This document shows positions 20,580-62,200 of a stretch of 64,000 bases of DNA, in pieces (position 1 is the stretch's first letter; every line of letters starts with the position of its first letter). Under the pieces are notes generated by a model that was given only the letters and a program-made list of their open reading frames with translations, was not told the origin of the DNA and ran no database searches. The stretch spans positions 124,001 through 188,000 of IMG/VR virus record IMGVR_UViG_3300025000_000053. One strand, written 5' to 3'. The position numbers and the translations under genes were made by a program.

Positions 20580-20966
20580 TTAATCATCAAAAGCCTTTTC
20601 AGTTGGTATTTCTTTAATATCCCAATCATCTTTATCTCTATTTTCGTTTATTATTTCATTACATAAATTGATACATTTTTTACATATACTTGCTTGTTCA
20701 GAATAAACAATAAGATTTTCATCCGTATTCTTTTCTCCACAAAAAGAACAAAAGACACCGCTTTCTCTATAAATATTTTCTGAGGAAGCAACAACAATTC
20801 CTTTATAATTAAATTTATTTTCTTCTATCCAATCTCTAAATTTTTTATTAATAACTTCCAAATACTCACTTTCTGGAACTAGAATTTTTGAATCTAAATG
20901 TATTAATTTAGTATTTATAACTTTTTTAATAAAAGAAAATTTCAAAATATCACCTCCATCATTCAT
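20580..20966 (-). CDS. Protein with a ClpX-type C4 zinc finger
   Basis: CSFCGEK...ICKKCINLC. Confidence 0.75.
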   Translation of the reverse strand: MNDGGDILKFSFIKKVINTKLIHLDSKILVPESEYLEVINKKFRDWIEENKFNYKGIVVASSENIYRESGVFCSFCGEKNTDENLIVYSEQASICKKCINLCNEIINENRDKDDWDIKEIPTEKAFDD

Positions 20967-22002
20967 TTAACCAATTAATTAATTGGTTTCTTGGTTCTTT
21001 ATTATATAAAAAATATTGAGCTACACATCCACCACCACATCTCATTATTTTATTACAATTATTAATACAAAGTTCTGGTACTTCTCTTGTTCTTAAAAAT
21101 ACAATTAATTTATCATAATACCATATATCATATAAACTTGTTTTTAAAATATTAGTAGGTGATATAAAATCACCCAACCATTTAAATGCTTCACAAGGAA
21201 ATATTCCACCTTTAGCCGATATATTTAATTTGTTAATAGCAACTGAACATGGTTTATTATTTTTGTCATTAATTATACAATTAAATGGACAACCAAATCT
21301 AACAGATATATCTTTATATCTGTTATCACTAATTTTATTATTAATTTCCTTTAATAATAGTTCCATATTGTCTCTACTAACCTCTAACTCATTATTATTA
21401 AAACATCTCCCTTGTGGAACAAGTCTTAATAAACTTATTTTTTTAATACCAATATCATTAATTATATCTATTAAATCTAGAAAATCAAGATAATTTATAC
21501 TCATAGGCACAAAATGAATTTCTGTTTCAATATTATATTTTAGACAACTTTTAATTGAATTTATAATAGTGTTAAAGGCATTTTTAATTTTAACAATTTT
21601 ATATATAGTTTCGTCATTTGACCCATGTAAACTAATCACAATCTTATTAATATTTTCTTTTAAAAATAATAAAATATCTTCCGTTATAGACGATAATTTA
21701 TTATTATGATATATGATTCCACAACTATATATTGTAATATGTAAACCTAATTTTTTAGCAAAAGAAATTATTTTTTTAAATTCAGGATGAAGTAATGGAT
21801 CTCCACCAGATATTGATAAATTTTCAACTCCTTCAGAAACAGCATCTAATAATATATTTTTTATATCTGAAAAAGATAATATATCTTTACTTTTAGAATT
21901 AGCTTTAGATGAACAGTGAATACAATTTAACATACATTTATTTGTTATTTCTATACATAAATTTTTTAAACTAATATCTGGAAATAATTCACACATTCTC
22001 AT
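20959..22002 (-). CDS. Radical SAM/SPASM-domain protein
   Basis: CMLNCIHC, SGGDPLL, C-terminal CSVA...GIFPC...C...CGGGC. Confidence 0.9.
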   Translation of the reverse strand: MRMCELFPDISLKNLCIEITNKCMLNCIHCSSKANSKSKDILSFSDIKNILLDAVSEGVENLSISGGDPLLHPEFKKIISFAKKLGLHITIYSCGIIYHNNKLSSITEDILLFLKENINKIVISLHGSNDETIYKIVKIKNAFNTIINSIKSCLKYNIETEIHFVPMSINYLDFLDLIDIINDIGIKKISLLRLVPQGRCFNNNELEVSRDNMELLLKEINNKISDNRYKDISVRFGCPFNCIINDKNNKPCSVAINKLNISAKGGIFPCEAFKWLGDFISPTNILKTSLYDIWYYDKLIVFLRTREVPELCINNCNKIMRCGGGCVAQYFLYNKEPRNQLINWLNE

Positions 22003-22014
22003 TTAAATACTCCT

Positions 22015-23226
22015 TTATACAATCAAATTATTTAATTCAATACGAGATATTTGTGATGTTGAATTATGAAATTTCTTCATTGATAAATTAACTAATGTAG
22101 ATGATACTCTTGCCGAAGTTAATCCAATATTAGTTATATTTAATTTTTCATACATAAGACCAGCACACACTCGACATAACTTTTTAGATACATTTCCCAT
22201 TGGAGTTCTCATTTTAACTTTATTACCAATATATTTATTTATATTATCATCATCCAATAAAATTAGTTTATTTCTTTCCATAATATATCTATATATATAA
22301 TCATTAATATTTTCTTTAGTTATTTCTACCTCCATTAATGCTTTAGAACCACAGTCACTACCTTTTTCATCCAAAACAACAGCTTGTAAAGCTGCAATAA
22401 TTTTTTTAGAAAAATAACCAGAATCAGCTGTTCCAATAGCTTTAGGATATGCACCCGTTATAATAGCATTTCCGTAAACAGCTAAATCTTCTTTTTTTAT
22501 ACCTTCCATTAAACAATTTTCAACAAAATCAAATTCACCTGTAGATGGATTATATACCGGACCTTTCATAATATTAGTGTTTTTATAGTTATTACTGAAA
22601 GTACCTCTAGCACCTGATTTATATAATTCATATCCAGTGTCATCTTTTAATTCTTCTTCAGCTAATTGTATTAGCTCTTTTTCAATTTTAACTGCTGTTA
22701 TTATATCCCCTTGTTTTAACTTTTCCTTATTTTCTTTTATTAATTTATTCTTCAAATCAATAACTTTAGGAATAGGTTTAAATAATTTCATAGTATATGA
22801 ACCTGAAATAACAATATGAAATTGTTGAGCTAACCATTGAATATCATTAAGATAATTAACCATAATATCAACAGATATTTTATCATTTAATAAAGCTTTA
22901 GAAAGTTTATTTTCTATTTCTGAAAGTACTTTCTTATCTATAGTTTTATTAACATAACCAAGAATATTAACTAAATTTCTTTCAATTATATATTTATTAT
23001 AAATAAATAAACCTATATTAGTTGTAACTTTTTCTTTGTTAAAATATTCATTTGGTTTTAAATCAAATTCATCCCAGGTTTTAAATCTACTATTAATAAC
23101 ACTGACTTTACCGTTATTATCTTTTTTAATACTATCACCAAATAGGTTTAATAATAATTCAAATGTTATATCTTCTGGTTTTAAACTTAATATATATTCT
23201 TTATCCTTTTGATTTATCATTCCCAT
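22015..23226 (-). CDS. Phage RNA polymerase beta' C-terminal part; probably the virion RNAP
   Basis: SGARG, bridge helix GTADSGYFSKKIIAALQAVVL..DCGS, Zn site CRVC, trigger-loop-like NIGL...LSMKKFH; late-type promoter at 23260-23271. Confidence 0.88.
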   Translation of the reverse strand: MGMINQKDKEYILSLKPEDITFELLLNLFGDSIKKDNNGKVSVINSRFKTWDEFDLKPNEYFNKEKVTTNIGLFIYNKYIIERNLVNILGYVNKTIDKKVLSEIENKLSKALLNDKISVDIMVNYLNDIQWLAQQFHIVISGSYTMKLFKPIPKVIDLKNKLIKENKEKLKQGDIITAVKIEKELIQLAEEELKDDTGYELYKSGARGTFSNNYKNTNIMKGPVYNPSTGEFDFVENCLMEGIKKEDLAVYGNAIITGAYPKAIGTADSGYFSKKIIAALQAVVLDEKGSDCGSKALMEVEITKENINDYIYRYIMERNKLILLDDDNINKYIGNKVKMRTPMGNVSKKLCRVCAGLMYEKLNITNIGLTSARVSSTLVNLSMKKFHNSTSQISRIELNNLIV

Positions 23227-45976: not shown

Positions 45977-46822
45977 TTAATAAAAAATAAAACCATTAGT
46001 ATCAAATAATTTAATCATATTATTAATAAACTTTCTAGTCATTTTATCTTTTATTTCATAATTATTTTTAAAATATATAATAAAAATCATTGATAAATTT
46101 TTACTATAAGTTTCTTGTAATATTTCTCTAAAAGATTTATCTCTATTTTTAAGTGATATCTCATCCCAATTTTTTATTATTGAATATGAGTATAATCCTA
46201 ATTTTCTTTTTTTCTTAGAAAATCCAGCTAGATGTCTAGAAAATATATAATCGGTATTAATATCACTATTCATTAATTTAAAATTATCAACCAAATTAAT
46301 ATAACTATTTAAATAATAAGGTTTCTTTTTAATATTCCCTATATTAAATGTAAAAAAAATATTATTACATTGACATGTATGTTCCTTATTTAAAATAATA
46401 ACATCTTCTAATATATAATTAGGATAAAATAAGTATAATACTGATAAGAAATTATCTAAAGGTAATTCAATAATAGGTTCACCTATTTCTTTTGATTGTA
46501 AGTTTATTTTAAATAATTTCTTATATTTATTATCTTTAAATAAAGTAAAATAACGATTATTATTTAAATCAACATGACTAATCATATTATTATCTTTATT
46601 TATTATATATTTATCATTCATAAATAAATGAATAAATTCAATATCTCTTAATAAAGCATTAAATATAACATCTAAAGAAGGTAAACCATCTTTTAATGGT
46701 GTAATAGTTATTTTATTATTTTTAATTGTATAACGCCACCATGTATAAGTTCTTCTAGTTAATCTCTTATAAGTAACAACTCTGTCTAAAATTGGATGTA
46801 TAAAATTCATAATAAAAATCAC
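45977..46822 (-). CDS. Hypothetical protein
   Basis: 281 aa ORF. Confidence 0.6.
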   Translation of the reverse strand: MIFIMNFIHPILDRVVTYKRLTRRTYTWWRYTIKNNKITITPLKDGLPSLDVIFNALLRDIEFIHLFMNDKYIINKDNNMISHVDLNNNRYFTLFKDNKYKKLFKINLQSKEIGEPIIELPLDNFLSVLYLFYPNYILEDVIILNKEHTCQCNNIFFTFNIGNIKKKPYYLNSYINLVDNFKLMNSDINTDYIFSRHLAGFSKKKRKLGLYSYSIIKNWDEISLKNRDKSFREILQETYSKNLSMIFIIYFKNNYEIKDKMTRKFINNMIKLFDTNGFIFY

Positions 46823-46831
46823 CCCTTAATT

Positions 46832-47341
46832 TCATATTAATACATCTCTAGCATTTAATATGAATAAAGTATGAATAAATTGAGATACTGTTTTTCCAAG
46901 TAAGTCACAGTACATTTCTTCACCCTTCCAACAATTATTTTCATCTATATAACCTAATATATCAATTTTACCAAATTTCCTCATATATTGAAATATAGCA
47001 TGAGCACATTCATGTGTAATTACATTTATATTACATTTTTCTATAGGAATAAGTATTTCTCCAATTTTATTTAATGTAATATCTCCTTTATATATTTCTA
47101 AGTCTCTACATATTGCATCAAAATTACATTTTCTATACCCTCCAGTATTATTATAATAAACATACATTGATTCATGAGAATTAAATATAAATACTTCATA
47201 ATATTTATCATTTCTTTGCATCTGTTGTGGATATATTTTAAATATTTTAAGTAATCCATTTACATTCATCTTAATCCTCCTTTTAATATAAAAAAATAAG
47301 AACTTATTAAAAAGTTCTCTAGATTTTAAAAAGCTATTCAA
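46832..47341 (-). CDS. HExxH metallopeptidase-like protein
   Basis: VITHECAH followed by a downstream EE. Confidence 0.55.
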   Translation of the reverse strand: MNSFLKSRELFNKFLFFYIKRRIKMNVNGLLKIFKIYPQQMQRNDKYYEVFIFNSHESMYVYYNNTGGYRKCNFDAICRDLEIYKGDITLNKIGEILIPIEKCNINVITHECAHAIFQYMRKFGKIDILGYIDENNCWKGEEMYCDLLGKTVSQFIHTLFILNARDVLI

Positions 47342-47609
47342 ACAAAGATTCAGAATTTATTATTCATCTATAATAAAATTATCACATTTATTATAAATAT
47401 TATTAACTAAAATATGAAAAAAATAATATCTGTGTTTCTCACAGATATTATTTAATATAAAGTTATTCAATTTCATAACAGAAAAATATTTGATTTTTTT
47501 GTAAGAAGCTTCTCTATACAAGTTATATATGAGGATTATCAAAATATCTCTCCACAATAATCCTTTTCTTATTCTATTGAATAATATATATTTAGAAACA
47601 CTAAAAATA

Positions 47610-47903
47610 CTAAAAAAGTTTATTATTTATTTTGTAGTTTTTATTAAATATATCACTTTCCCTTTCAATAATATTTAAATACATTAATCTTTTAAAAACT
47701 CTTGATACCTCACCCCTATCTAAATCCAAAGTACGAACTATGTCAGATTGTTCTATACGTTTAAATTCATTATTATTAAGTCTCGGTATTAAATATAATA
47801 ATACTTTATAATCACTTTTAATCAAAAATGGATTTTTTGCTAAGTTCATAAAGAATTCAATATTCTTTATATTTTTTGGATCTACGCTCACCAATACCAC
47901 CAA
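47610..47903 (-). CDS. Winged-HTH DNA-binding protein
   Basis: YKVLLYL...QSDIVRTLDLDRGEVSRVFKRL..LNII. Confidence 0.75.
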   Translation of the reverse strand: MVVLVSVDPKNIKNIEFFMNLAKNPFLIKSDYKVLLYLIPRLNNNEFKRIEQSDIVRTLDLDRGEVSRVFKRLMYLNIIERESDIFNKNYKINNKLF

Positions 47904-47913
47904 CCCCTAAAAA

Positions 47914-48318
47914 TTAAAGTGATAAAATTTTTAAATAGTTTTCAAATGAATTATGGTCTAATAACAAAGCTAAGTTATCAAAATTATTATTAACAATATC
48001 TGTTAATTTCCAATCATCTATACGGACATTATAAAAAGTTCTAGAATACAACACAAAGTCAGCATATACACCTTTTTTAAGATTATTTAAAGAATTAATT
48101 CCTGTATTAAAATCATGAAATGTTAAACTATTAATATTATCATTAATTTTATGCATAGATAAAGATGTAAACCTACTAAGTAAAATATTTGCAAGTTTAT
48201 TACTACATTCAGGTATATATTTTATTTCTCGTTTACTGAGTTTCATTTCACCACTAATACATAATTGATTTTCATTACTAAAAACAACTTTAATATTTCT
48301 AATATACATTGAATTCAC
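47914..48318 (-). CDS. Hypothetical protein
   Basis: 134 aa; RBS GGAG. Confidence 0.6.
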   Translation of the reverse strand: MNSMYIRNIKVVFSNENQLCISGEMKLSKREIKYIPECSNKLANILLSRFTSLSMHKINDNINSLTFHDFNTGINSLNNLKKGVYADFVLYSRTFYNVRIDDWKLTDIVNNNFDNLALLLDHNSFENYLKILSL

Positions 48319-48330
48319 TCCTAAATTTAA

Positions 48331-48636
48331 TTATTTTTTATTTAGATATCTACAAAATAGATCATACATATCAACAACACGGTTTATACCAATATCATTA
48401 CTGTCATAAAATTCAACAGCTCTCCAAAGATCACTGATGATATTTATTTTATTATTTATTTCAGCAATTATTTCCTGAACTGCTCTAATATCATCTAAGA
48501 TGTTTTGTGAATAATTAAATGCACGAATACAATTTAATTCTTTAAGTCTATCAATTATATTTATTAAATCCTCTTTATTAACAATAATATCTTCTACCTC
48601 TTTACAATATAAATAATTATAACTTCCACCACTCAT
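48331..48636 (-). CDS. Hypothetical phage protein
   Basis: MSGGSYNYLY N-terminus; 101 aa. Confidence 0.65.
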   Translation of the reverse strand: MSGGSYNYLYCKEVEDIIVNKEDLINIIDRLKELNCIRAFNYSQNILDDIRAVQEIIAEINNKINIISDLWRAVEFYDSNDIGINRVVDMYDLFCRYLNKK

Positions 48637-48665
48637 AATTTTTTCAACCCCCTAAGTAAAATTAT

Positions 48666-49442
48666 TCATTTACATAATTTATCCTTAAATTCTTCAATAA
48701 AATCTTTTGATAAAATTTGATTATGATATATCCATTCCCATTTAACATTATCTTTAAACTCTAGTATAAAATCTTCTGATAATACTTGTTTAGAGCTTAT
48801 TAAATCCCATTTAACATTATCCTTAAATTTCCTAATAAAATCTTCAGATAAAATTTGGTAAAAACTTATGTCAATCCAATCAACCTTATCTTTAAATTCA
48901 CAAATAAATTTTTCAGATAAATTCTGATTACAACTTATTGACATCCAATCAACTTTATTTTGAAATTCTCTAATAAAGTTTTCTGATAAAATCTGACAAA
49001 AACTTATTTCAATCCAATCAACTTTATTCTTAAATTCTCGTATAAATTCTTCAGATAATTTCTGTTCTGAACTTATTGATATCCAATTAACTTTATTTTG
49101 AAATTCTCTAATAAAGTTTTCTGATAAAGTCTGATGATAACTTATTTTATTCCAATTCACTTTATATATAAATTCACGAATAAAATCTTCAGATAATTTC
49201 TGATGAGACCATATTTCAATCCAATCAACCTTATTCTTAAATTCTCGTATTAATTCCTCAGATAAAAATTGAGTACAACTTATAGCTTCCCAATCAATTT
49301 TATCATTATATTTTTTAATAAATTCTTCAGATAATTTTTTATACATAGATATATTTGCCCAATTAATTATATCTTCATTACATTCAATTATATCTATAAC
49401 AATATCATCTTTCTTAATAAGAATATCATTCATATTAAACAA
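48666..49442 (-). CDS. Tryptophan-repeat solenoid protein (10 x 23 aa)
   Basis: Consensus VDWxxISxxQxLSEEFIREFKNK; 69-bp DNA periodicity; early motif at 49479-49488. Confidence 0.85.
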   Translation of the reverse strand: MFNMNDILIKKDDIVIDIIECNEDIINWANISMYKKLSEEFIKKYNDKIDWEAISCTQFLSEELIREFKNKVDWIEIWSHQKLSEDFIREFIYKVNWNKISYHQTLSENFIREFQNKVNWISISSEQKLSEEFIREFKNKVDWIEISFCQILSENFIREFQNKVDWMSISCNQNLSEKFICEFKDKVDWIDISFYQILSEDFIRKFKDNVKWDLISSKQVLSEDFILEFKDNVKWEWIYHNQILSKDFIEEFKDKLCK

Positions 49443-49491
49443 CCACCATTCATATTTTATTTATATTTTTTCATTATAATAATATATATTT

Positions 49492-50181
49492 TTATTTATT
49501 AATATTTTTTCTACCTATATACATCATTATACCATAATAACCTCCAGTTATTCTTTTTGGTTCCTTCAGATATAAATCATTTAATGCAATAATTTCAAAA
49601 TCATTAAAATAATTTTTCATTTCATTTTTAGTGATAGGTATTTGTTTAAAATTTAAATAATTGATATCATTTTTTGATAATTTATTATCTAATAACATTT
49701 TATTTTTTTGATTAATATTAAATATTGGGTCATTTTCAGAGAGTGTATTAATAAGAACTACTCCATTATAAATTAAACCATTTTTTATATTATTTATAAG
49801 TTTTTTAATATTATTTTTTGATAAATAAGATATTGTCATTGAGCATATAATTAAAGAATATGTGTTTACAGGTATATTAAAAGATGTGATATCTTCTGTT
49901 TTAAATATACATTTAGAATTACAATATTTATTTTTAAGTTCTTCAATTATAACATTAGAAAAATCAACACCTTCAACTGAAAACCCATTTTGTAATAAAA
50001 AATTTACGTTTTTACCAATACCTATTCCTAATTCAAGTGATTTACCTATTGGAATATATTCTAAACATTCTTGTAATAATATATCAGGATTTGGGTTAAA
50101 ATAATGATCTCCAATAGTATAAATATTATTATAGTGGTTTTTAATACTATTTATTTCACTTTCTTCCAATAAAGAAAACAT
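49492..50181 (-). CDS. Class I SAM-dependent methyltransferase (TehB-like)
   Basis: SLELGIGIGKN, GVDFS, EDIT, YSLIIC. Confidence 0.85.
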   Translation of the reverse strand: MFSLLEESEINSIKNHYNNIYTIGDHYFNPNPDILLQECLEYIPIGKSLELGIGIGKNVNFLLQNGFSVEGVDFSNVIIEELKNKYCNSKCIFKTEDITSFNIPVNTYSLIICSMTISYLSKNNIKKLINNIKNGLIYNGVVLINTLSENDPIFNINQKNKMLLDNKLSKNDINYLNFKQIPITKNEMKNYFNDFEIIALNDLYLKEPKRITGGYYGIMMYIGRKNINK

Positions 50182-50408
50182 TTAATAATAAAACCTCCTT
50201 TTATTTAATATTTTTTTCTCTAATTAAAAGTTGTTGAACAAATAATTAATGACTAATTTTATTAAATTTTTCAGGAGGTTACTGATGACAAATGCCTGGA
50301 CATCTGCTCGGTAATAACAAACTTTTGACCTTAATTAATTCTAAAGATAATTTAGAATTTAAGGTTTCTTTTGTTACCACACTCGTAGAGTATTTTTATC
50401 TGTTCACC

Positions 50409-50420
50409 AACATCTTTATA
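50409..50420 (+). promoter_or_regulatory. Putative late promoter AACA-N6-TA (representative copy, upstream of RNAP beta)
   Basis: Also at 2430, 3534, 27016, 50237, 56171 (+) and 10279, 23260, 24242, 29922, 35991, 38536, 45935 (-); matches the AR9 late consensus as I recall it. Confidence 0.7.
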
Positions 50421-50456
50421 ATAAAAAAATTATAAGGAAAGGTTGGTGAACAGATT

Positions 50457-53400
50457 TTGATTTTTATTTCTGATATACCACATTTAAAAACCTATAAGCA
50501 AAAAGTTCTATTACCTAAAGATGAGAAGTATCCTAGTATTAATAGTGTAGTTTTTATTATTAATAATAACATACAATCATCTATAGGACTATTAAACCAT
50601 CAATTTATTAAGAATAATAACATGTATCATTTTTATTTTATGGATCACGTATATAACGGTAAATTATTTAATAGAACTTTTAGAGTTTTATATCGTAATG
50701 AAAGAAATGATATTTATAATAATATAGAAAAAGAAGTTCGATTCATACAAACAGTTCTAGATTTACATTCAGTAAATAAGAAAAATATATATGTTGATTT
50801 AATAAAACATAATAGTTTATTCTTTCAATTAAGTAAAAAAGTTAATTTTACAATTCGTATTAAAAATTATATAGATTATCTAGATAAGTTAATTAATGAT
50901 AGTCATTTTAATCAGTATAAGTATAAAACTATTTGTATTGATATTAATAGTTGGGTTAGTGATTTAAAGACTCAAATAAAAGGTAAATTAAATTTTGATA
51001 ATCCAATATTTATTATTTATTATTGTATGTATAAATACCTTGAAAAATTTAAAGAACTAGGGGATATTAATATTATTTTCTATACTAATGATAGTGTATT
51101 AAGATTAAATCCTTCATTATGTGATAAAAGCTCATATTCTTTATTTAAGAAAGAGATTATCAAAGCGTCTCCTAAAAGTTTATTAGATATGAGTGAAGAT
51201 AATATTGAAAAAGTACTAAAAAGAAAAGATGTTGCTGATAAAATAATAGGATATCTTAATGACCAACATAGATTTGTTGGTGATGATAAAACTGAAGAAG
51301 ATGAAAATTTTGAAACTAGTATTGAAGATAAAGTAGATGAAATAATTGATGCTAATAAGTTAGATAATAATAGTAATGATGAGATGTATAGTGAAGTTTC
51401 AAAAGTTATTATTAATGATGATGAAATTATAAAAAAAATTCATATGATGAATCAAGAGAATAAAGTTGGTAGAAGTACAGCTTCTATTAAAAGGGACGAA
51501 GAATTAAGAAAAAGACAAAAAGAGATAATAAAAGATAAAATAGGAATAGATAATATCTATGAAACTAATAAAGAACAACTAGATATTCCTAAATTTGATG
51601 TTACAGATAAAGTTAATACTACTAATAAAAATGTAACTACTATAAGATATCCTCAATTTGAAAAAGCTTATAATGAAGTTCTTCATGAAAAGGATTTACT
51701 TAATAATATAAAATTTTTAAATGAAAAATCTATTCCAGTTTATATTAGAGGTATAGAACGAGTTGATTCATCCGATGAATTAAATTTAAAAGAAACATAT
51801 ACTTTTGATTTAGAAGATGAAAATAGAGTTAGGCATAAATTAAAATTTGATATCCCTAAATTTATAGATGATAAATTTTTATATCTTGGTGGTAATAAAA
51901 AGATTATTATGAAGCAATTATTTATGAAGCCAGTGGTTAAGACTGGACCAGATGAAGTACAGATTTGTACTAATTACAATAAGATGTTTATTAGACGCTA
52001 TGGTAATAAAATATCATCTAAAATAGAAAAAATGAGAAAATTATTATATGAACAAAAAGAAGGTAAAGGTATTAAAGTTAAATATGGTAATAATTTATCT
52101 ATTAATAACAAATATGATACTACTATAGAATATGATGAATTATCTAAAAGCTTTACTTATATCCGTATAGGTAAAACTGAATTTTATTTTAATCAAGATG
52201 ATGCTACAAATATAGTTAAAGATAAAAAAATAAAACTTAATCAAAATGAATTCTTATTAGGTCTTATTGAAAATGGTAAAAATCCAATACCTATTACAAT
52301 TGATAAAAATACTCAAAAAATAGGCACATCTTTCGATATAGTTGACTATATACTTTCTATGTTGACACAAGGATTAGTGCAAGATTTTGATGATACTAAA
52401 AGTGGTAAGAAATTTGTTTACACTAGAGCTTATATAATGGAAAGACATGTTCCAGTAGTTTTGTTAATTTCATTCTTAGAAGGTTTATCTACAGTAATAA
52501 AAAAAGCTAATATTAAACATTATTTTTCAGATAAAAGACCTAAAGATATTACTCATAATGAGGGAATAATTCAATTTAGTGACGGGTATTTAATATATGA
52601 AAAATATCCATTTGAAAATTCTTTATTAATGAATGCATTTGCAGATATTCCAACTAAAACTTTCGAATATGGTGAATTTGATTCAAAAGATGTTTATTTA
52701 TCTTTATTTGATACTTTATATGGTAATAGGATAATTGGTAATGCCTTTCTTAACTCATATGAATTTTTAATTGATCCTATTACAAGAGAAGTATTAGAAG
52801 ATTTAAACTATCCAACAGATTATGTTTCTTTAGTTTTATATGCTAATTCTTTATTAGCAACTAATTCATATATTAAAGAAAATAATATGAATTTATATAG
52901 AATAAGATCAAATGAACTGGTTAATGCCTTATTATATAAAGAAGTTGCTAATGCTTATATTAAGTATAGAACTACTTCTTTAAATAATAATCCTGTTAAA
53001 ATTTCTGTACCACAAGATGTTATTATTAAAAAGATACTTGTTGCACAGACAGTCGAGGACTACAGCACATTAAATCCTATAACCGAAGTCGAGAAATCCC
53101 GTATGATCAGTCCAAAAGGACATTCAGGAATGAACCTGGATGAAGCGTATACACAAGATAAAAGAGCATATGATAAAACGATGCTTGGTATAATAGCTAT
53201 GTCAACTTCACCGGATTCATCGTGTGGAGTAACAAGACAACTTACATTAGAACCCAATATAAAAAATCCGAGGGGATATATCGATATAAATGACGATAGA
53301 TTAGAAATTTTAAAAGATGCAAATCTATTTTCTCCAGCTGAATTATTATCTCCTCTCGGAAATACAAGGGATGAACTTGCTATTGTCCCACTATGTAGAA

Positions 53401-56093
53401 ATATATAGTTAAAAACTCTTCTAATTGTCGGGGACATCCTTAACGCTCTTATTACCAAACTAATATAGTAATATATTAGTGGTGAAGGGTAATGCCTTAG
53501 GTATGGTAACAAGATAAGAGATTGGGTTATCCGCAGCTAAGATTCCTATAAATTTTATAGGAATAAAGTTCAAAGACTATCGAAAGCATGTTTATTATTG
53601 ATATAAAATATAATAAACAGAAGTGAGTAGAGTAGGGAAACCGAAACGGAGAGCATCTGAACACATAATGGTGAAGATGATGATATAGTCTGTCACTTAT
53701 GGAAATCATAGGTGGTTCCTGGATAGCATAAGAACAGCGATAAATAAAACTTGTCGCATTATCTAGTAATAGATAAATAAAAAATCTCCTTAATTGTCGG
53801 GAAATCTCTTAGAGCCTAAAACTACTAAGTTATATTAGTAATAATATAATGGCTTAGTCTAATCAACTAAGGTATAGTAATAAGGTTTTAGGATTGAGTA
53901 ATCCGCAGCTAAGATTCTAATATATTAGAATAAAGTTCAACGACTATCGAAGGCAAACTTATTATAGAAATAAAAATATAATGAGTTTGTTAGTAGAGTA
54001 GGGCTCAAGTGAGTTCTGAAATGGGAGACTCCTTATTATTTAATAATAAGGATGAAGATATAGTCTTATATCCTAAGGAAACTTAGGGAAGTTCATAAAA
54101 GAACTGCATAGATTAACGATCTATGTGAAATAAATGGAGTGTAAAACAATCGAAACATATCGTACCTGTAGTTAAACAATCACCAGTTTTATTATCTAAT
54201 GGAGTTGAACAAGTTATTCAATATCACTTATCTGATGATTTTTCAGTTGTAGCTAAAGATGATGGTGAAGTTGTTGAGATAGATAGTGAAACTGGTTTAA
54301 TTATTATTAAATATAAAAATGGTGAAACTAAAGTAATTGATACAAGTCCAAAAGTTGTAAAAAATGGTAAACTAAATGCCCACTTATATGGTGACATATA
54401 TGTGAATCTTCTTTAATTGTCGGGGAAACTCTTAGAACTTTTTATTATATAATAAAAAGATTGAGTAATCCGCAGCCAAGTCTCATAGTAAAAAAAATAA
54501 AGTTCATGAAGAACTCTATTACAAAGATATTGGAAAATTTTATAAAAAATCAAATACTCCATGGTATTTTATTGTATAACAAAGTTGATGATGAGTTGAT
54601 CTGAGTTCTTTTTTAATAATTTTAAAATCTATATCTATCAAATATTTCTCTAATAAGGGAAGTGTTTCTTCAATGAATATATTAAAAAGTTCTAAGTTCT
54701 TTTTAGCTATGAAAAAGTCACTAATTTTTTTGATATCATTATTATATCTTTTTAGTTCATTTTCATACCTCTGGGTAAAGAATTTTTTAGTTAATTCTAT
54801 CGATATAGGATTACAAAACTCATCACTTAACTCATTAATATTCCTCATTATAATATCTTTGTAATTAATTTCTCCTTGCTTCATTTTATTTATCATTCCT
54901 TTCTTTTTTATATTACGTAAATAATATATAAATGAAAAATAATGAAATACTATGAGAAAGGTTCAACGACTATCCCTTTGGCTTTGAAATAAGCAATAGG
55001 AGTAGGGCTCAAGTGAGTGGGTGAGAATCCCTTAAATCGAAATAGGAAGCATCCTTATGAGATGAAGATATAGTCTAGTATCTTATCGAAAGATAAGGAA
55101 GTTCATAAGAGAACTGCATAGATTAACGACCTATGTGAATATATATCGGCTGGTGGTTTCTTCTTATCAAATAAATTAACATGTAATTTGAAAGTAGGGC
55201 AAAAAATAAAAAAACGAGATATATTAGCTTATGACAGTAACTTTTTTAGTAATAGTAAATTATATGGTAATAGATTCAATATTGGTTCATTACAGAAAAT
55301 AGCGTGTATGTCCTCATACTCAACATATGAGGATTCTACTTTTGTCACTAAGAAATTATGTGAAGATATGGCAACTGAGATTGTTATGGAAAAACCAGTT
55401 GTCTTAGGTAAAAATGCTAATGTTGATTATATTGTTGAAATAGGTCAAAATGTTAGTGTTGGTGATGAACTAATTAGATTTGAAGTTTCTTTTAAAGATG
55501 AATCACTAAATAAATTTCTTTCAAATATTGGAGATGAATTAAAAGAAGAAATTAAAGCAATGGGTAAAACACCTATTAAAACTAAATACTCTGGTGTAAT
55601 TGAAGACATTAAAGTATATTCAACTGTAGATGTAGAAGAACTATCTCCAACATTAAAAAAAATTGTTAATAATTATTATGATAGAATTAATAAGAAGAAA
55701 AAAATTATTAATAAATATAATAAAAGTGATTCTGTATATAAATGTGGTATAATGTTAAATGAACCTGTAACTAAGATTGAAACTAAAGATGGTAAAGTTA
55801 AAAGTCATACTGTTAATTCAGGAGTTTTAATTATATTTTATATTAAATATAAAGATACAGTTGGTGTTGGTGATAAGATATGTTTCTTTACTGCTTTGAA
55901 ATCTATTGTCGGTGAAGTTATCCCTGAAGGATATGAACCATATTCTTTATTTAGACCAGATGAGAAGATTTCTTCAGTGGTTGCTCCAGGAGCAGTAATG
56001 AATAGAATGACCCCTTCTGTTATTCTATCAATGTTCGGTAATAAAGTATTGATAGAATTAAAACGAAAATTAAAAGATATTTATGATGAATAA
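50457..56093 (+). CDS. Phage RNA polymerase beta part, spliced from 4 exons (50457-53372, 53722-53741, 54137-54368, 55149-56093; ~1370 aa); probably the virion RNAP
   Basis: KGHSGMN, STSPDSSCGVTRQL, junctions NTRD|DSIRTAM|SVKQSKHIVP and VVKNG|AGGFFL, VGDK, NRMTPS; lacks the extreme beta C-terminus; late promoter at 50409-50420. Confidence 0.9.
53373..53721 (+). mobile_element. Group I intron 1 of RNAP beta (349 nt, no ORF)
   Basis: P1 GGGAU|GA:UUGUCCC; P10 GAUAGCA:UGCUAUU; AAUUGUCGGG, AUCCGCAGC, GUUCAAAGACUA, GAUAUAGUC; ends in G. Confidence 0.9.
53722..53741 (+). other. 20-nt micro-exon GATAGCATAAGAACAGCGAT
   Basis: Bounded by the terminal G of intron 1 and the P1 of intron 2; encodes DSIRTA plus AT of the Met codon. 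Confidence 0.85.
53742..54136 (+). mobile_element. Group I intron 2 of RNAP beta (395 nt, no ORF)
   Basis: P1 GCGAU|A:UGUCGC; AAUUGUCGGG, AAUCCGCAGC, GUUCAACGACUA, GAUAUAGUC; ends ...AAAUG. Confidence 0.9.
54369..55148 (+). mobile_element. Group I intron 3 of RNAP beta (780 nt) carrying an antisense ORF in the P6 loop
   Basis: P1 GGU|A:UGCC; same core motifs; stem TCTCATAGTA (54481-54490) : TACTATGAGA (54948-54957) encloses a ~460-nt insert; ends ...AUAUCG. Confidence 0.88.
54540..54896 (-). CDS. Orphan ORF antisense within intron 3
   Basis: 118 aa (114 aa from the second ATG); RBS-like AAGGA; early-type promoter at 54921-54930; no LAGLIDADG, GIY-YIG or HNH motif visible. Confidence 0.65.
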   Translation of the reverse strand: MINKMKQGEINYKDIIMRNINELSDEFCNPISIELTKKFFTQRYENELKRYNNDIKKISDFFIAKKNLELFNIFIEETLPLLEKYLIDIDFKIIKKELRSTHHQLCYTIKYHGVFDFL

Positions 56094-56101
56094 ATAAAAT
56101 T

Positions 56102-56139
56102 AATAATATCAATAGAGAAAATTCTCTATTGATATTATT
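56102..56139 (+). terminator. Terminator after RNAP beta
   Basis: 18-bp stem AATAATATCAATAGAGAA / TTCTCTATTGATATTATT followed by a T-tract. Confidence 0.75.
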
Positions 56140-56220
56140 TTTTATATTATCATTTTTTGTTTAATAAAAAAACATTAATTTAAACAATAAACTTTTAATG
56201 AAAGGGGTTGTAATAATAAA

Positions 56221-59200
56221 TTGGATATAAAAAATAAAACTAAAATTAAGACTAAGTCACCCACAGCATTAAATTGGTTTAAAAATGTTGGAAAATCTTT
56301 AGGTTATACTACAACTGAATTAATTGAAGAAATGATTCCTGCTCCAATAGAATTTATTAAAAGTAATACTCAAACATTTAAAAATTTTTATGATGAATTA
56401 CGTAAAAATAAATCAATAAATAAAAAATTGTCGGATCAAATGATAAAGAATGAATATATCAATATAGGTCAAACAGCAATAAAAAATGCTTTAAAAGATA
56501 TTAAATCAGGTAAGATTTATAACAAAGATAGACAAGATGAAATATTTAATGATGATATTGATTTTGAATTTGGTGATGATATAAATTTTGATAATGAAGA
56601 TTATAAAGTTTCATCAGATACAACATCTGAATCAAGTACAAGTAGTTCTTCACCTACTATCAACAGAGTGAATATTACTTCTAATATCAATAGAAATAAT
56701 CCTATGGTTAGAGCTGTAGAAAGACAAACTGAAGCTATATATAATACAACTCAAGCTAGTGATAAAATATCAATATCTTTAGCTACTAATCATATGATGA
56801 TAAATAGAAAAGTAGGGGAAGATATAAATACAGGTTTAAGTGCTATAAATGATAATTTAAGTTTACTTGTTAATTTTCAAAGTGAATCAATGACTAAATA
56901 TATAGGTACTACATTTAAATACTATGAAGAAAGTTTGAATGTATTTAACAATATTCATGAGCAAATGAAAAAAGGTACTATTACTGTAGATGATAAGACA
57001 GGTAAAGAAAAATTTGATCCTATGGAATCAGTTTTTCTTTCTAGAGGTGGGTTAAATCTATCAGGTTATGCTAATTTAATTAAAAAACAGTTTGGTACAG
57101 CTGTAGACCAAGATATGATTTTATCTCAATTAAAATATATGTTATCAGATAAAGACCAATTAAAATTTTTAGCTGCTTCACCTATAAGTTTTTTATCTAC
57201 TAAGATAGTAACTGCATTTATTCCGTCTATGTTAAAACAAACATTAACTAGTATGAATAAAAGTTTTGAAAATTTCTTCCCAGCTTTATTAATGAAAGCT
57301 AATAGAATGGTTGGTTCTCAAAATCCAATACTTAATTTCTTAGGTCAAGTTTTTGGTATAAATGTAAAACAGAAATCATCTGTTGATTTATCTCAATATA
57401 ATAAAGGTAAAACTGCTTTTGATGGTTATACAAAGAAAGCTATAACAGAAGTAATACCAGGATATTTAAGAAAGATTTTAGCTGCATTAAATGGTAAAGA
57501 AGAAGTTGCTTTTGATTATGATAATGGTGTTTTTAAATCTATGGATTCTATGAATAAAGATTTTCAAAGTACTGTTAATAGAAGTATATTAAGTAGTTTT
57601 TCTGATGTTATGAATGAAATAAAAGACAAAGCAAATGCTTTTAATATTCAAAATGATGAGGAACGAAAGAAATTTAATAAAGACTTAGAAAGTTTTTTCT
57701 TAAAACTTCCTAGTTTAAATAAATTAATAAATCCTATAAGAACTAAAGATAATGATGGTAATAGTATAAATGAATTAAAAACTGTACATGATTTTGGTAG
57801 TGAAGAAATGAATAATTTCTTTAGACAATTAGTACTATCACTTGATAAAGGTGATATTCAGAAAATGTTTGGTACAGATGTATTAAATGCTAGAAAAAAT
57901 AAAGAAAAAATATATAATGATGCTGAACTTAATCCATTAAGATATAACGCAGCTTTAATTAATAATCAATTAAATTTTGATGATCATATTAAGAGAAATA
58001 AATATAATAAAAGTCAATTTGAAGTAAAAAAAGGTTTTGGAGTTTTATCTAAAACCGATCAATTTAATAAAATTGATTTGGACTATTTACGTGATATTAA
58101 AGAAATTTTATTAAGAGGTATTAAAGTATTCCCTGTAACTCAGATAATTAATCCAGATGGTTCAATATCTCAACCAAGTTTTGAATATCATGATACACAA
58201 TTAAGAAGAATGAGAAGTCAGGAAAGAGAAAGAGATAGAAAATTTAAAGTAAAACCCCAACAAGATACTGAAATTACACCTGAATTAGAAAGGATTAATA
58301 GACAGCAGGGTAAAAGAATAGTTAATAGATTATCAGATTCAGATATAACTCCTGAAGAAATGAGAGAACAAATTAGAGTATTTGATGAACAAAGAAGAAG
58401 TGATTCAGAAAGAGATAGAAGACAACAAAGTGGTTGGTTAGGAAGTTTTATATCTGGGGATATGCAAACTAAATATAATTTATTAAGAGAAAAAGTAAGA
58501 GATATCTTTAATACACCTGCTAAATTACTTAATACTGTATTTAAAAAAATAGATGAAACTATGTTTAAAATAGTCTTTGGTGATGATGACAAAGGTAATT
58601 CTTCTTTTCTTAATAGAACATGGTCTTTAATGCAAAGTAATTTTCAAAAAATGTCTGAATGGTTTAAAGATAAAATATTTAATCCTATTAGAGAATCTTT
58701 ATTTGGACCAAATGGTTTTATAACTAAATTAAAGAATTCTGAATTATTTACAAAAATTAAATCTAATTTTAGTAAATTAACAGATTTTTTATTTGGACTA
58801 AAAGATTCTACTGGTAAAAGAAAAGGTGGGATGTTTTCTGATACATCTAACCATCTTTTAGATATATTTGATAGTGCTAAATACTATTTTACAGGTAAAG
58901 CTTATATAAATAGATCAGGATTATCTTTTCCTACTAATAATAAAAGTGTATTTGGTGAACTAAAATCAATGTTTTCAGGTTTTAAAGATACTATAAAATC
59001 TTATTTATTTGGTAGAAGGAATCAAGATGGGAATATACAAGAAACAGGTATTCTTTCAACAGCTATTAATAGTATAAAGGATGGTTTTCAAAACTTTTCA
59101 AATGCTATTTTTGGTCCACAGAAAATTGGTGGTAAGGATAATAAAAATTATGTAATAGTTAGTGATTTATTTAAGAAGTTTAAAGAAAGATTACCTAAAT

Positions 59201-62200
59201 CATTATCTTTTGGTATTATCGGAGCTGGTAGTGGGTTATTAATGGGTGGTAAGTTAGGTTTATTAGGTTCATTATTTCTTCCTGGTGGTCCTATTGGTGG
59301 AGCTATTGTTGGTACCACAGTTGGTTTCTTATCTCAATCAGATAGATTTAAAGATTGGTTATTTGGTTCTAAAGATATTAATAATAATCGTATTGGTGGT
59401 TTTATTAATAAGAAAACTCAAGAGTTCTTTAAAAAAAATAAAGTTGGTATCGTTGGTGGTGCCAGTTTAGGAGCTCTTAAATCTATATTAGGATTTGGAT
59501 TATTACCCTCGTTCTTTTTACCTGGTGGTCCTATTGGTGGTGCATTATTTGGTGCCGGTTTATCAATGTTAGTTAGTTCAGAGAAATTTAAGAAATTTAT
59601 GTTTGGGGATTTACAAGCAGACGGAAATAGAATTGGTGGAATAGCTCAAAAAATATTTGGTAAAGTTGATAGAAATAAAGCTAAAAAGATGTTTGGTAAT
59701 GTTAGTGCTGGTATAATAGGTGGAGCTGGTATAGGATTCGTAACTAGTAAATTTGGTTTATTAGGTGCCGCTTTATTACCAGGTGGTCCTTTAGGTGGAG
59801 CCTTATTAGGTGCCGCCGCCGGTATTGCTCTATCTTCTGAAAAATGGAAGAAGTTAGTATTTGGTGAATTTGATGATGAAACTCAATTAAGAAAAGGTGG
59901 TTTATTAGGTAAAGTTATTAATTGGACTAATTTAGAAATTCTTCAACCTATTAAAATTAAATTACAAGAAATAAATTTAAATGTTAAAGAATGGTTTACA
60001 AGAAGTATTGCTAACCCATTTCTTAATGCAATTGATCCAATTAAACATGAAATAAAATTAATGATACGTAGTTTAAAAGATAATTTTGTAGAAGGTTGGA
60101 CTAGTTTTAAAGTTTTTATTGGTAATGTATTTGAAAAACATGTAGGTGCACCTTTTGGTAAATTTATGGAAGATAGAGTTATGAAACCATTAAGAGGATT
60201 TATATCAAAAATATTAGGTGGGATTGGTAGAATTGTTGGTAGTATTGTATCAGCACCATTTAAAGGTATGGAAGGTTTATCAAGAGGATTAAATAGAAAA
60301 CATATGCAAGCTGGTTTAGATGCATATGTTGAAGAAGGTTGGAGTGATTTATTAGATTTTAAAGGTAGAAGACAACGTGGAGAAAAAATAGGTTTCTTTG
60401 GTGGATTAAAGAAATTTAAAGATATTTATTTTAATAGAGAAGCTAGAGAGGACGCTAAAAATAGTAGTAAAGGTGCTCCATATTCTAAGCAATTAGAAAT
60501 TGATAGACAAAAACGTGAAGAAGAGGCTAATACTAAATTTTCCAATGAAAGAGAAAACATAAGAAAAATGTGGAGTTCTTGGAGAGATAGAAAAAGAGCT
60601 GGTGCTGATAATAATTATGATAATTTTAGTCCTGATGGTAAAGTTGTTAAAAACCAGTATTACCCTCCAGATGAACAAAGAGTAGATAGAAATTCACCTA
60701 ATCCAATTAATGATGTTACAGATGATATAACTAGAAGAACTGGTAGGAAAGGAAGAAGAGGTAAACCTAATCCTAAACCTGTAAATGATCAAAGTGTAAT
60801 TATATTACCTGGTTCAGTTCAACAAGATGACACATCAACGATTGTTGATGATGTTACAGATGTTATCTATAGAAGAACTGGAAATAGATCAAATAGTAGA
60901 AGAGGAAAAAAATCAACAACATCCCCACAACCTATTATTAATCAAAATGAACAACAATCTGAAGAGTCATCACAACCAATTATTAATCAAAATCAACCAC
61001 CTAGTAAAAAACCATCTACTACAAGAATTAAATCATCTAATGAATTATTACTACAGATAGCTACTGATGTAAGAACTATTGCTAAAGAAGTTAATGGTCA
61101 ATTAGATGGTGTTGGTGGTAATGTTTATAAAATAAGAAAATTAATTCAATCACAACAAGGTATATCAGATGAAGATTTAAGTGGTGAATCGAATAGAGAT
61201 AGGATTGGATTCTTTGGTAAAATAAGAAGAATGTTATATAGACCAATAGATACTATTAAAGAGAAAGTATTAGGTTCTATTAAATTTGTAACTGATAAAA
61301 TTACTTCTGTAGGTAAAACAATATTTGATTTTAGTAAAACAATATTGGTTACTATACCTAAACAAATATTTTCAACTATGTACAATATAGGTTCTGAAAT
61401 ATTATCAATCGGAAAAGAAACTTTTCTTAATATAATTAAATTACCTGGTCAATTATTGAATTTATTTGCTCAAACCACAAAAATATTTGCTGAATCAATT
61501 AAAATGATATCACCTGCTATTGGGGAAACTCTTAAAGGTGTTGCCAAATTATTCTCAGGTACAATGGGAATGATCGCTGAATCAATGATAGGTGTTGGTA
61601 AAGGTATTGGTCAAGTTGCTTTTAGTATTGGTGAGGCTATTGGCTCAATAATATCTACTTTTAGTAAAGGTTTGATGAGTGTAGTTCCAGTAGTAGGTAA
61701 ATTTTTATTGACATCTAGTAAGATGATTATGGATTTCGGATTTGGTATAATTAAGAATGTTGGTGGTTTATTAACAAGTATTACTAAATCTTTATTTAGT
61801 ATAGCAACATCACCAATTAGATTTGCAGCGGATATGCTTGGTAGAGCTGTAGGTATTAAGAGATCTGAAATGTATATTACAGGTGGTGTTATTGATGTAG
61901 TTAGAAGGATTGGTGATAATACCTCTGACTTTACACAAAAACCAAAAGATGATAATAGAAGTAATATATTTGATAATTCAGATAATGTTGTTATGCCAGT
62001 AAGAGTAGATGGTGTTACTTCAGTTAGAATTGTTGGTTCGGATAGACCAATTCCTATTTATTTTAATATGAATATGAATCAAAATCAACGTAGAAGTAAT
62101 TCATTTAATAATAATATATCAGGATTGCCTAATTCAATTAATACGGGAAATAATAATTATTTAGTTTCTTCATTAACGAATGCACTTGATATATTTGATA

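What the first reader, a model, noticed from the sequence alone, without database searches (positions are those of the whole stretch)
50457..56093. RNAP beta gene split into four exons by three group I introns
Seen: the ORF track shows two fragments plus a hidden 232-nt exon. Removing the three introns gives one ~1370-aa frame with GDK and NRMT motifs (E. coli K1065 and R1106 regions) that ends before the usual beta C-terminus. Established: AR9-like phages have split, intron-containing RNAP genes. Automated annotation would call this gene broken.
Basis: partly seen in the sequence, partly recalled or inferred. Interest (0 to 1): 0.7.

Follow-up and report, generated by a model that had tools for sequence, protein, structure and literature searches.

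The report
Three introns split phage polymerase gene
A 250-kb phage from groundwater carries the main subunit gene of its packaged RNA polymerase in four pieces separated by three self-splicing group I introns, so the gene is intact rather than broken; this is already known from its relative AR9.

Summary
Window 50457-56093 (+) encodes the beta subunit of an AR9/phiKZ-type virion RNA polymerase. It is interrupted by three group I introns:
- I1: 53373-53721
- I2: 53742-54136
- I3: 54369-55148

The four exons are 50457-53372, a 20-nt micro-exon at 53722-53741, the 232-nt exon at 54137-54368, and 55149-56093. Joined, they give 4113 nt and 1370 aa with no internal stop, with GDK at residue 1297 and NRMT at 1341.

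Uninterrupted relatives are colinear across all three junctions. One close relative, and DNA contigs from the source samples, lack exactly the 395 nt of I2. Another relative has I2 but not I1.

I1 and I2 flank the codons of the catalytic HDDxxRxxM motif (E. coli D674-M681). The "missing" beta C-terminus is a separate gene at 22015-23226 (-), as is usual for these phages.

Splicing itself is unproven, because no RNA data exist.

This is a new member of a known kind. The AR9 orthologue has five introns, and PhiPA3 has an intron one codon away from I1.

One extra feature: the P6 loop of I3 carries an antisense gene cassette of unknown function, apparently complete with promoter and terminator, and it has moved between paralogous introns.

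The parts
50457..53372 (+). Exon 1 (2916 nt, aa 1-972). TTG start, with AAGGAAAGG about 12 nt upstream. Ends ...LSPLGNTRD.
   Evidence: Listeria phage LPJP1 residues 1-1035 align to 50457-53351.
53373..53721 (+). Intron 1, group I, 349 nt, no ORF. P1 pairs GGGAU (53368-53372) with GUCCC (53385-53389), with U53372 opposite G53385. P10 pairs GAUAGC (53722-53727) with GCUAUU (53379-53384). The terminal G is G53721.
   Evidence: Rfam 61.0 bits. Pairings read. P10 covaries in L029 (GAUAGU/ACUAUU). The intron is absent in L026, L027 and L028.
53722..53741 (+). Exon 2, a 20-nt micro-exon (GATAGCATAAGAACAGCGAT). It encodes D973-A978 plus the first two bases of the M979 codon, corresponding to E. coli beta D675-M681 and including the R678 equivalent.
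   Evidence: The same 20-mer is joined directly to exon 3 in L022. It is flanked by introns on both sides in L029.
53742..54136 (+). Intron 2, group I, 395 nt, no ORF. P1 pairs GCGAU (53737-53741) with GUCGC (53753-53757). P10 pairs GAGU (54137-54140) with ACUU (53749-53752). The terminal G is G54136. Two extra 3' hairpins follow the end of the Rfam model.
   Evidence: Rfam 60.4 bits. Absent in L022. DNA contigs in runs X1 and X3 join 53741 to 54137, skipping 395 nt. Present at the same site in L026 and L029.
54137..54368 (+). Exon 3 (232 nt; completes M979, then aa 980-1056; ...SVKQSKH...VVKNG).
54369..55148 (+). Intron 3, group I, 780 nt. P1 pairs AAAAUGGU (54361-54368) with GCC(C)ACUU (54378-54385), with one bulged C. 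The P6 stem pairs 54481-54490 with 54948-57. The P6 loop is 54491-54947. The terminal G is G55148. It shares the 3' hairpins of I2.
   Evidence: Rfam pieces of 25.9 and 30.4 bits. Without the loop it is 84% identical to an above-threshold intron of the same genome. Orthologous introns with the same boundaries occur in L022, L023 and L029. Contigs of related sequences in X1/X3, aligned across this position, lack the 457-nt loop.
54540..54896 (-). Antisense ORF (118 aa, predicted four-helix protein, function unknown) inside the P6 loop of intron 3.
   Evidence: dN/dS is 0.23-0.5. A profile search finds 37 family representatives. AlphaFold2 pLDDT is 79. No family or fold assignment was obtained.
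54921..54930 (-). TATATATTAT motif 24 nt upstream of the antisense ORF. It matches the core of the AR9 early (virion RNAP) promoter consensus. An AAAGGAA ribosome-binding site follows.
   Evidence: AR9 consensus AAATATATATTAT-(6N)-G from PMC5312081.
54489..54515 (-). Terminator-like hairpin (AGTTC...GAACT) plus T-run on the minus strand, just after the stop codon of the antisense ORF.
   Evidence: Equivalent hairpin plus T-run in the L022, L023 and L029 copies.
55149..56093 (+). Exon 4 (945 nt including the TAA stop; aa 1057-1370; AGGFFLSN..., GDK 1297, NRMT 1341).
   Evidence: (PF00562 Rpb2 domain 6).
56102..56139 (.). 17-bp perfect hairpin with T-runs on both strands, directly after the stop codon. 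It looks like a bidirectional terminator.
22015..23226 (-). Separate gene for the C-terminal part of the virion RNAP beta subunit (403 aa).
   Evidence: 34% identity to the 408-aa beta-like protein encoded next to the beta gene of Staphylococcus phage SA1. phrog_2962 'RNA polymerase beta subunit', E = 1.4e-73.

Best explanation
The region is one intact gene for the large (N-terminal) polypeptide of the beta subunit of a jumbo-phage virion RNA polymerase. Three mobile group I introns of the phage type interrupt it.

Inferred mechanism: the gene is transcribed as one precursor and each intron removes itself by the usual two transesterifications. The last exon base is a U paired with G in P1, and the last intron base is G. 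The four ligated exons code for a 1370-aa protein.

I1 and I2 are independent elements that sit only 20 nt apart. The micro-exon is just long enough to supply P10 for I1 (its first 6 nt) and P1 for I2 (its last 5 nt). It encodes the catalytic-centre motif D-S-I-R-T-A-(M), equivalent to E. coli D675-M681.

All three introns sit in the most conserved part of the gene, as expected for homing introns. None of them now carries a recognisable homing endonuclease.

I3 carries, in its P6 loop, a small gene on the opposite strand with an apparent promoter and terminator of its own.

Shown here: the gene identity, the intron identity, the exact boundaries, and the presence/absence polymorphism. Inferred: that splicing occurs in vivo, that the protein is packaged in the virion, and that the antisense gene is expressed early.
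For: 1. Intron signals. Rfam RF00028 hits above threshold for I1 and I2, and two pieces for I3.
2. Open frame. The joined exons give an open 1370-aa frame.
3. Colinear homologues. Uninterrupted homologues are colinear across every junction. These are L028 (61% identity), L027, L031, LPJP1, SA1, phiR1-37 and JD-Fnp1. L028 reads LGVTRDDSIRTAMATKQSKH and VVKNGAGGFFLSN against the predicted LGNTRDDSIRTAMSVKQSKH and VVKNGAGGFFLSN.
4. Independent presence and absence.
   - L022 (88-91% identity) has I1 and I3 but not I2, with the micro-exon fused to exon 3 at exactly the predicted point.
   - L026 has I2 but not I1.
   - L029 has all three.
   - DNA contigs in runs X1 and X3 join 53741 to 54137.
5. 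Pairings. P1 and P10 fit all the chosen boundaries, and there is one compensatory P10 change in L029.
6. Identity as beta. A profile of the family matches bacterial RNAP beta, aligning HDDxxRxxM, EDS, GDK and SRM. Pfam Rpb2_6 matches exon 4.
7. Precedent. The AR9 orthologue is a six-piece join annotated as a virion RNAP subunit. The PhiPA3 RNAP beta gene has an intron immediately after the same two Asp residues (PMC11620839).
8. Genome context. The genome carries at least 15 related introns, 63-84% identical to these, in RNAP, DNA polymerase, terminase and recombinase genes.
Against: - There is no RNA evidence. The only RNA runs of the study are tiny and hold none of the region.
- I3 does not reach the Rfam threshold as a single hit. 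Its P1 has only three contiguous pairs before a bulged C, and no P10 is evident.
- The genome is a metagenome assembly in which roughly 15 similar introns could favour misjoins.
- Exon skipping between I1 and I2 would drop 20 nt and shift the frame, so the fraction of productive mRNA is unknown.
Confidence: 0.9

Rival explanations
1. The gene is a decaying pseudogene. The intron-like inserts no longer splice, and the phage relies on another beta copy.
For: No RNA data exist. I3 scores below the Rfam threshold and has a weak P1. No intron carries a recognisable homing endonuclease.
Against: - The spliced frame is fully open, with all catalytic motifs kept.
- Exon identity to L022 is 88-91%, with the same introns retained and their cores intact.
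- The only other beta-like hit found with the C-terminal-piece query lies at genome 246.8 kb, next to a phrog_3015 beta gene. By analogy with AR9 this is probably the separate non-virion enzyme.
- The record is rated 100% complete.
Confidence: 0.04
2. The exon-intron map is wrong in detail. Either I1, the micro-exon and I2 form one composite intron (a twintron or a single large intron), or the boundaries of I3 lie a few bases away.
For: I1 and I2 are only 20 nt apart. P1 of I3 is weak and it has no P10. An alternative pair of I3 sites (after U54373 and after G55153) would also keep the frame and the length.
Against: - L022 has I1 without I2, and L026 has I2 without I1.
- The 20 nt encode DSIRTA(M), which every uninterrupted homologue has.
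- The DNA joint 53741 to 54137 matches I2 exactly.
- For I3, four orthologous introns all end in G before GCN GGN GGN TTY and start after AAUGGU.
- L028 reads KNGAGGFF, not KNGKLGFF.
Confidence: 0.04
3. The arrangement is a metagenome assembly chimera, created by misjoining at repeated intron sequences.
For: At least 15 introns in the genome are 63-84% identical. Logan contigs of the source runs break inside the intron cores.
Against: Independent assemblies from other samples (L022, L023, L029) show the same exon order and the same intron sites. The exon order is colinear with uninterrupted genes.
Confidence: 0.02

Closest known systems
Bacillus phage AR9 / PBS1 virion RNAP beta gene (NC_031039 BI022_gp188; 'late gene g189' in PMC5312081)
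   Same: It is the orthologous gene: 29-46% identity over the aligned exon segments, about 29% over the first 895 residues. It is interrupted by group I introns in the same C-terminal third. Rfam finds five introns in the locus and the CDS is annotated as a join of six pieces. One of its introns holds a gene with its own early promoter.
   Different: - AR9's introns lie at codons equivalent to about 893, about 922-926, 986/987 and 1060/1061 of this protein. None coincides with 972/973, 979 or 1056/1057 here, although two are 4-7 codons away.
- The gene inside the AR9 intron is an HNH endonuclease on the sense strand. Here it is an unrelated small helical protein on the antisense strand.
PhiPA3 gp210 intron in an RNAP beta gene (Birkholz et al., Science 2024, PMC11620839)
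   Same: It is a group I intron in a jumbo-phage RNAP beta gene, inserted at the two conserved Asp residues (E. coli D674/D675). This is the same motif that I1 splits here.
   Different: - The PhiPA3 intron lies immediately after the second Asp. I1 lies between the two Asp codons.
- PhiPA3's intron encodes an active HNH endonuclease that is used in competition between phages. I1 and I2 here have no ORF.
Staphylococcus phage Twort orf142 (Landthaler and Shub, PNAS 1999; cited in PMC11878797)
   Same: It is a single phage gene with three group I introns and short internal exons. [quoted passage not shown]
   Different: The host gene is different (tail tube protein). Whether exon skipping happens here is untested.
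Phage-type (subgroup IA2-like) group I introns of T4, SPO1 and Bastille-like phages
   Same: Full-length matches to RF00028. About 60 nt are inserted between P7 and P3', where IA introns carry P7.1/P7.2. They are inserted at catalytic motifs of essential genes, and their presence varies among relatives.
   Different: The subgroup was not formally assigned here. Extra 3' hairpins follow P9 in I2 and I3. Most copies in this genome are ORF-less.

Membership tests
Group I intron (Rfam RF00028) | Covariance-model score at or above the curated threshold (50 bits) | tested here: met
   I1 scores 61.0 bits and I2 scores 60.4 bits, both matching model positions 1-253. I3 gives only 25.9 and 30.4 bits in two pieces because of the 457-nt P6-loop insert. 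With the loop removed it is 84% identical to an intron of the same genome that scores 76.4 bits.
Group I intron (Rfam RF00028) | The 5' exon ends in U paired with G in P1, and the intron ends in G | tested here: met
   The pairs are U53372/G53385, U53741/G53753 and U54368/G54378. The terminal G residues are G53721, G54136 and G55148 (read). The same holds in the orthologous introns.
Group I intron (Rfam RF00028) | Exact removal restores a continuous, conserved reading frame | tested here: met
   The frame is 1370 aa with no stop. It is colinear with seven uninterrupted homologues.
Group I intron (Rfam RF00028) | Self-splicing activity (GTP-dependent, in vitro or in vivo) | not testable with these tools
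   No RNA run holding the region was listed, and the RNA runs laid gave zero reads.
Mobile (homing) intron | Intron-plus and intron-minus alleles exist at the same site in related genomes | tested here: met
   I2 is absent in L022 and in DNA contigs of X1/X3. I1 is absent in L026. All three are absent in L027, L028 and L031-33.
Mobile (homing) intron | Encodes a homing endonuclease (HNH, GIY-YIG, LAGLIDADG and the like) | tested here: not met
   I1 and I2 have no ORF. The ORF in I3 has no Pfam or PHROG match. The orthologous I3 in L022 does carry a NUMOD4-type ORF, and an L029 intron carries an HNH_3/NUMOD4 ORF.
AR9/phiKZ-type virion RNAP beta subunit | Best homology is to the virion-RNAP beta genes, with the catalytic motifs of bacterial beta | tested here: met
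   tblastn against AR9, PBS1, SA1 and phiR1-37 g099 (a 'phage structural protein'). The profile search against the PDB aligns HDDxxR, EDS, GDK and SRM.
AR9/phiKZ-type virion RNAP beta subunit | Beta is split into separate polypeptides, with the C-terminal piece encoded elsewhere | tested here: met
   Window 22015-23226 (-) is 34% identical to the SA1 beta-like protein and matches phrog_2962 at E = 1.4e-73.
AR9/phiKZ-type virion RNAP beta subunit | The protein is present in the virion and transcribes early genes | not testable with these tools
   This is an uncultured phage from a groundwater metagenome.

The most novel reading that the evidence does not exclude
The P6 loops of these introns may act as docking sites for self-contained antisense gene cassettes, each made of an early-type promoter, a ribosome-binding site, a 115-120-aa four-helix protein and a terminator.

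- The cassette, together with its P6 stem, sits in I3 in the window, L023 and L029, but in I1 in L022. It has therefore moved between paralogous introns.
- Its protein family is otherwise free-standing among small phage genes.
- It could be a new type of intron-associated mobility or competition factor.
- Alternatively, its early antisense transcript could hold back the late virion-RNAP beta mRNA.
Probability: 0.2. Interest if true: 0.55.

Novelty: new member of a known kind. Interest (0 to 1): 0.35.

Why it matters
- **Annotation.** Gene callers will report this essential gene as two fragments plus junk. The same holds for at least ten other genes of this phage, including most RNAP subunits, the DNA polymerase and the terminase. 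Exact exon maps are needed before such metagenomic jumbo phages can be compared or their polymerases modelled.
- **Intron biology.** The locus is a compact natural example of two independent ribozymes sharing a 20-nt exon that encodes an active-site arginine. Relatives carry every combination of the two introns. This makes it a convenient system for studying how tandem group I introns splice without skipping the exon between them, and how introns spread among the polymerase genes of jumbo phages.
- **What it does not change.** It does not alter the current picture of jumbo-phage RNAPs or of group I introns.

Tried and rejected
- **Single-sequence PDB searches.** phmmer with exon 1 and with exon 4 against PDB sequences found nothing. 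Only a family profile worked.
- **Pfam on exon 1.** No hit on exon 1 or on the C-terminal-piece gene.
- **RNA evidence.** Two run searches and one read-laying run found no RNA holding the region.
- **Function of the antisense ORF.**
  - Pfam, PHROGs, a PDB profile search, Foldseek against PDB and BFVD, the ESM Atlas, tblastn against phage records and a word-based protein search all gave no assignment.
  - Matches to four-helix bundles such as Avd or the 23S rRNA intervening-sequence protein have TM below 0.5. I do not count them.
  - The N-terminal extensions of longer family members gave no informative domain.
- **Sigma-70 promoter scan.** It found fewer sites than in shuffled sequence, so it is uninformative for this phage.
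- **Tandem duplication of I1 and I2.** Rejected. I2 is closest to the terminase intron (80%) and I1 is only 66% identical to I2.
- **The minus-strand ORF 53060-53512 (150 aa).** It overlaps exon 1 and I1, has no family match, and is taken as spurious.


Full report
**Where the window lies**

The window is bases 124001-188000 of a 249,853-bp IMG/VR virus record rated 100% complete. The DNA runs that hold it are groundwater metagenomes. G+C in the scanned stretch (46000-60000) is mostly 17-30%, rising to about 36% over the intron-rich part.

**The observation**

One search shows the two plus-strand ORF fragments: 50457-53408 (983 aa) and 55188-56093 (301 aa). Rfam finds two full-length group I introns above threshold: 53368-53713 at 61.0 bits and 53732-54088 at 60.4 bits. 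At a relaxed threshold it finds two further pieces, 54418-54506 (P4-P6 region) and 54899-55098 (P7-P9 region). These two pieces are the halves of a third intron whose P6 loop holds a 457-nt insertion.

**Gene identity**

- tblastn of exon 1 and of the last exon hits the beta-like genes of AR9, PBS1, Staphylococcus jumbo phages, Listeria phage LPJP1, Yersinia phiR1-37 and Fusobacterium phages at 26-40% identity.
- The AR9 gene is annotated 'RNA polymerase beta subunit ... virion RNAP subunit', joined from six pieces. phiR1-37 g099 is a 'phage structural protein'.
- Four of these phages have uninterrupted genes of 1393-1484 aa.
- A profile of seven uninterrupted family members matches bacterial RNAP beta in the PDB, E = 8.5e-19. 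It aligns the motifs HDDxxRxxM, EDS, GDK...K and SRM.
- Pfam finds Rpb2 domain 6 in exon 4.

**Exact boundaries**

LPJP1 aligns as follows:

| LPJP1 residues | Window coordinates |
|---|---|
| 1-1035 | 50457-53351 |
| 1051-1125 | 54141-54365 |
| 1126-1434 | 55146-56081 |

Reading the sequence against the group I rules gives these boundaries:

| Intron | Span | P1 | P10 | Terminal G |
|---|---|---|---|---|
| I1 | 53373-53721 | GGGAU / GUCCC | GAUAGC / GCUAUU (6 bp) | G53721 |
| I2 | 53742-54136 | GCGAU / GUCGC | GAGU / ACUU (4 bp) | G54136 |
| I3 | 54369-55148 | AAAAUGGU / GCC(C)ACUU, one bulged C | none evident | G55148 |

I2 and I3 share two extra hairpins after the end of the Rfam model. This is why their true 3' ends lie about 48 nt beyond the Rfam coordinates.

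The exons are therefore 50457-53372, 53722-53741 (20 nt), 54137-54368 (232 nt) and 55149-56093. Joined, they give 4113 nt and 1370 aa without a stop, with GDK at 1297 and NRMT at 1341.

**Independent support from relatives**

A scan of viral contigs returned twelve related loci.

- L028 (61% identity), L027 and L031-33 are uninterrupted. They read straight through all three junctions. L028 has LGVTRDDSIRTAMATKQSKH and VVKNGAGGFFLSN, against the predicted LGNTRDDSIRTAMSVKQSKH and VVKNGAGGFFLSN.
- L022 (88-91% identity) has I1 and I3 but not I2. The identical 20-mer GATAGCATAAGAACAGCGAT runs directly into GAGTGTAAAAC....
- L026 has I2 at the same site but not I1.
- L029 has I1, I2 and I3 with the same micro-exon, plus at least three more introns.
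- In L029 the sixth micro-exon base is U instead of C, and the guide sequence has A instead of G. This is a compensatory change in P10 of I1.
- In the source samples, DNA contigs of a co-occurring relative join 53741 to 54137, skipping exactly 395 nt.

The three introns are therefore separate, mobile elements with precisely defined ends.

**Where the introns sit in the enzyme**

By the profile alignment:

- I1 lies between the codons equivalent to E. coli D674 and D675.
- I2 lies inside the codon equivalent to M681.
- The micro-exon therefore encodes D-S-I-R-T-A plus two bases of M, including the counterpart of R678.

That R678 contacts the incoming NTP is from my own knowledge, not tested here.

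The PhiPA3 RNAP beta gene has a group I intron immediately after the same two Asp residues (PMC11620839). AR9's introns in the orthologous gene fall at equivalents of about 893, about 922-926, 986/987 and 1060/1061. These are near the sites used here, but none coincides with them. This motif region is thus a repeated target.

**Why the protein 'ends early'**

The protein stops about 30 residues after NRMT. The remainder of beta is a separate 403-aa gene at 22015-23226 (-). It is 34% identical to the beta-like protein encoded beside the SA1 gene and matches phrog_2962 at E = 1.4e-73. Split beta and beta' subunits are the norm in these phages (PMC7598289).

A 17-bp hairpin with T-runs follows the stop codon at 56102-56139.

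**Genome context**

The genome holds 16 RF00028 matches at E <= 0.001, 12 of them above threshold. By PHROG matches of their flanking exons, they interrupt:

- five further RNAP beta/beta'-like genes
- two DNA polymerase genes or gene pieces
- the large terminase
- a UvsX-like recombinase
- a virion protein

The introns are 63-84% identical to one another. I2 is closest to the terminase intron (80%) and I3 to one in another RNAP gene (84%). I1 and I2 are not each other's nearest relatives. This points to spread between genes, not to a local duplication.

**The passenger in I3**

The P6 stem (54481-54490 with 54948-54957) closes a 457-nt loop. Contigs of related sequences in the source runs, aligned across this position, lack exactly this loop. 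The loop contains a minus-strand ORF of 118 aa (54540-54896).

Location of homologues:
- Homologues of 38-47% identity lie, also antisense, in I3 of L023 and L029, but in I1 of L022.
- In L022 the cassette carries the same P6 stem as the window's I3. The whole P6 module has therefore been exchanged between paralogous introns.

Evidence that it is a real gene:
- dN/dS is 0.23 for the closest pair.
- A profile search of 1.8 billion representatives finds 37 members of 105-206 aa with nearly invariant R, Y-N, D, E and R positions.
- The three contexts I read are free-standing genes in arrays of small phage genes, one directly upstream of a TnpB gene.

Structure and function:
- AlphaFold2 gives a four-helix protein (pLDDT 79).
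- No search gave a function.

Signals around the ORF:
- Twenty-four nt upstream lies TATATATTAT, the core of the AR9 early-promoter consensus AAATATATATTAT (PMC5312081).
- In this genome the motif occurs 57 times, against 29 +/- 4 expected.
- 37 of the 57 copies have a same-strand ATG ORF starting 10-70 nt downstream, mostly 24-48 nt. The flipped control gives 4 of 57, and random positions give 11%.
- The 50 nt upstream of the ORF are nearly identical in the window, L022 and L023, although the proteins are only 44-47% identical.
- A hairpin plus T-run follows each copy of the ORF.

I infer a self-contained, probably early, transcription unit on the antisense strand. It is comparable to AR9 g190, an early gene inside an intron of late gene g189, but in the opposite orientation and with an unknown function.

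**What is not shown**

No RNA run holding the region was listed, and the small RNA runs of the study gave zero reads. Splicing, exon skipping, virion packaging and expression of the antisense gene therefore all rest on inference.

**Verdict**

The case is a new member of a known kind. The notable details are the 20-nt active-site micro-exon shared by two independent introns, the full set of presence/absence variants in relatives, and the antisense cassette in P6.

Noticed in passing
window 10833-12646 (-), intron at about 11175-11526 (-): A second RNAP beta-like gene (phrog_2987) in the window is split by a group I intron. The whole-genome search scored it 53.6 bits, but the window-wide Rfam call missed it. 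Its exon frames are 11495-12646 and 10833-11138.
   Followed up: partly
whole genome G000 (window = 124001-188000): The genome has 16 RF00028 matches, 12 above threshold. They interrupt most RNAP subunit genes, two DNA polymerase pieces, the large terminase, a UvsX-like recombinase and a virion protein. The introns are 63-84% identical to each other.
   Followed up: partly
window 56221 to beyond the window end (genome 180221-190087): A single 3288-aa ORF lies directly downstream of the beta gene. It has no Pfam hit and only weak PHROG matches: phrog_26249 (unknown function) and tape-measure-like phrog_1272.
   Followed up: no
genome-wide; in the window for example 54921-54930 (-), 10798-10807 (-) and 49479-49488 (-): TATATATTAT is over-represented: 57 copies against about 29 expected. 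It is strongly oriented upstream of genes: 37 of 57 copies against 4 of 57 in the flipped control. It matches the core of the AR9 early (virion RNAP) promoter consensus, so it is probably this phage's early promoter.
   Followed up: partly
L029:3972-4415 (-): A different antisense ORF (147 aa, no Pfam match) sits inside intron 1 of the L029 beta gene. This is a second kind of antisense passenger in these introns.
   Followed up: no
L034:4001-5565 and L035:769-2333: A distant member of the small helical protein family lies 9 nt upstream of a TnpB (OrfB_IS605 / Cas12f-like) gene in a phage-like contig.
   Followed up: no
window 20959-22002 (-): A radical SAM / SPASM-domain protein is encoded immediately next to the gene for the virion-RNAP beta C-terminal piece.
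   Followed up: no
L024, L025, L030, L026 and L029: Relatives carry introns at other sites of the same gene, at equivalents of about aa 877/878, 919-922, about 1300 and 1343/1344. L029 has at least six introns. The C-terminal third of this gene is therefore a general hot spot.
   Followed up: partly
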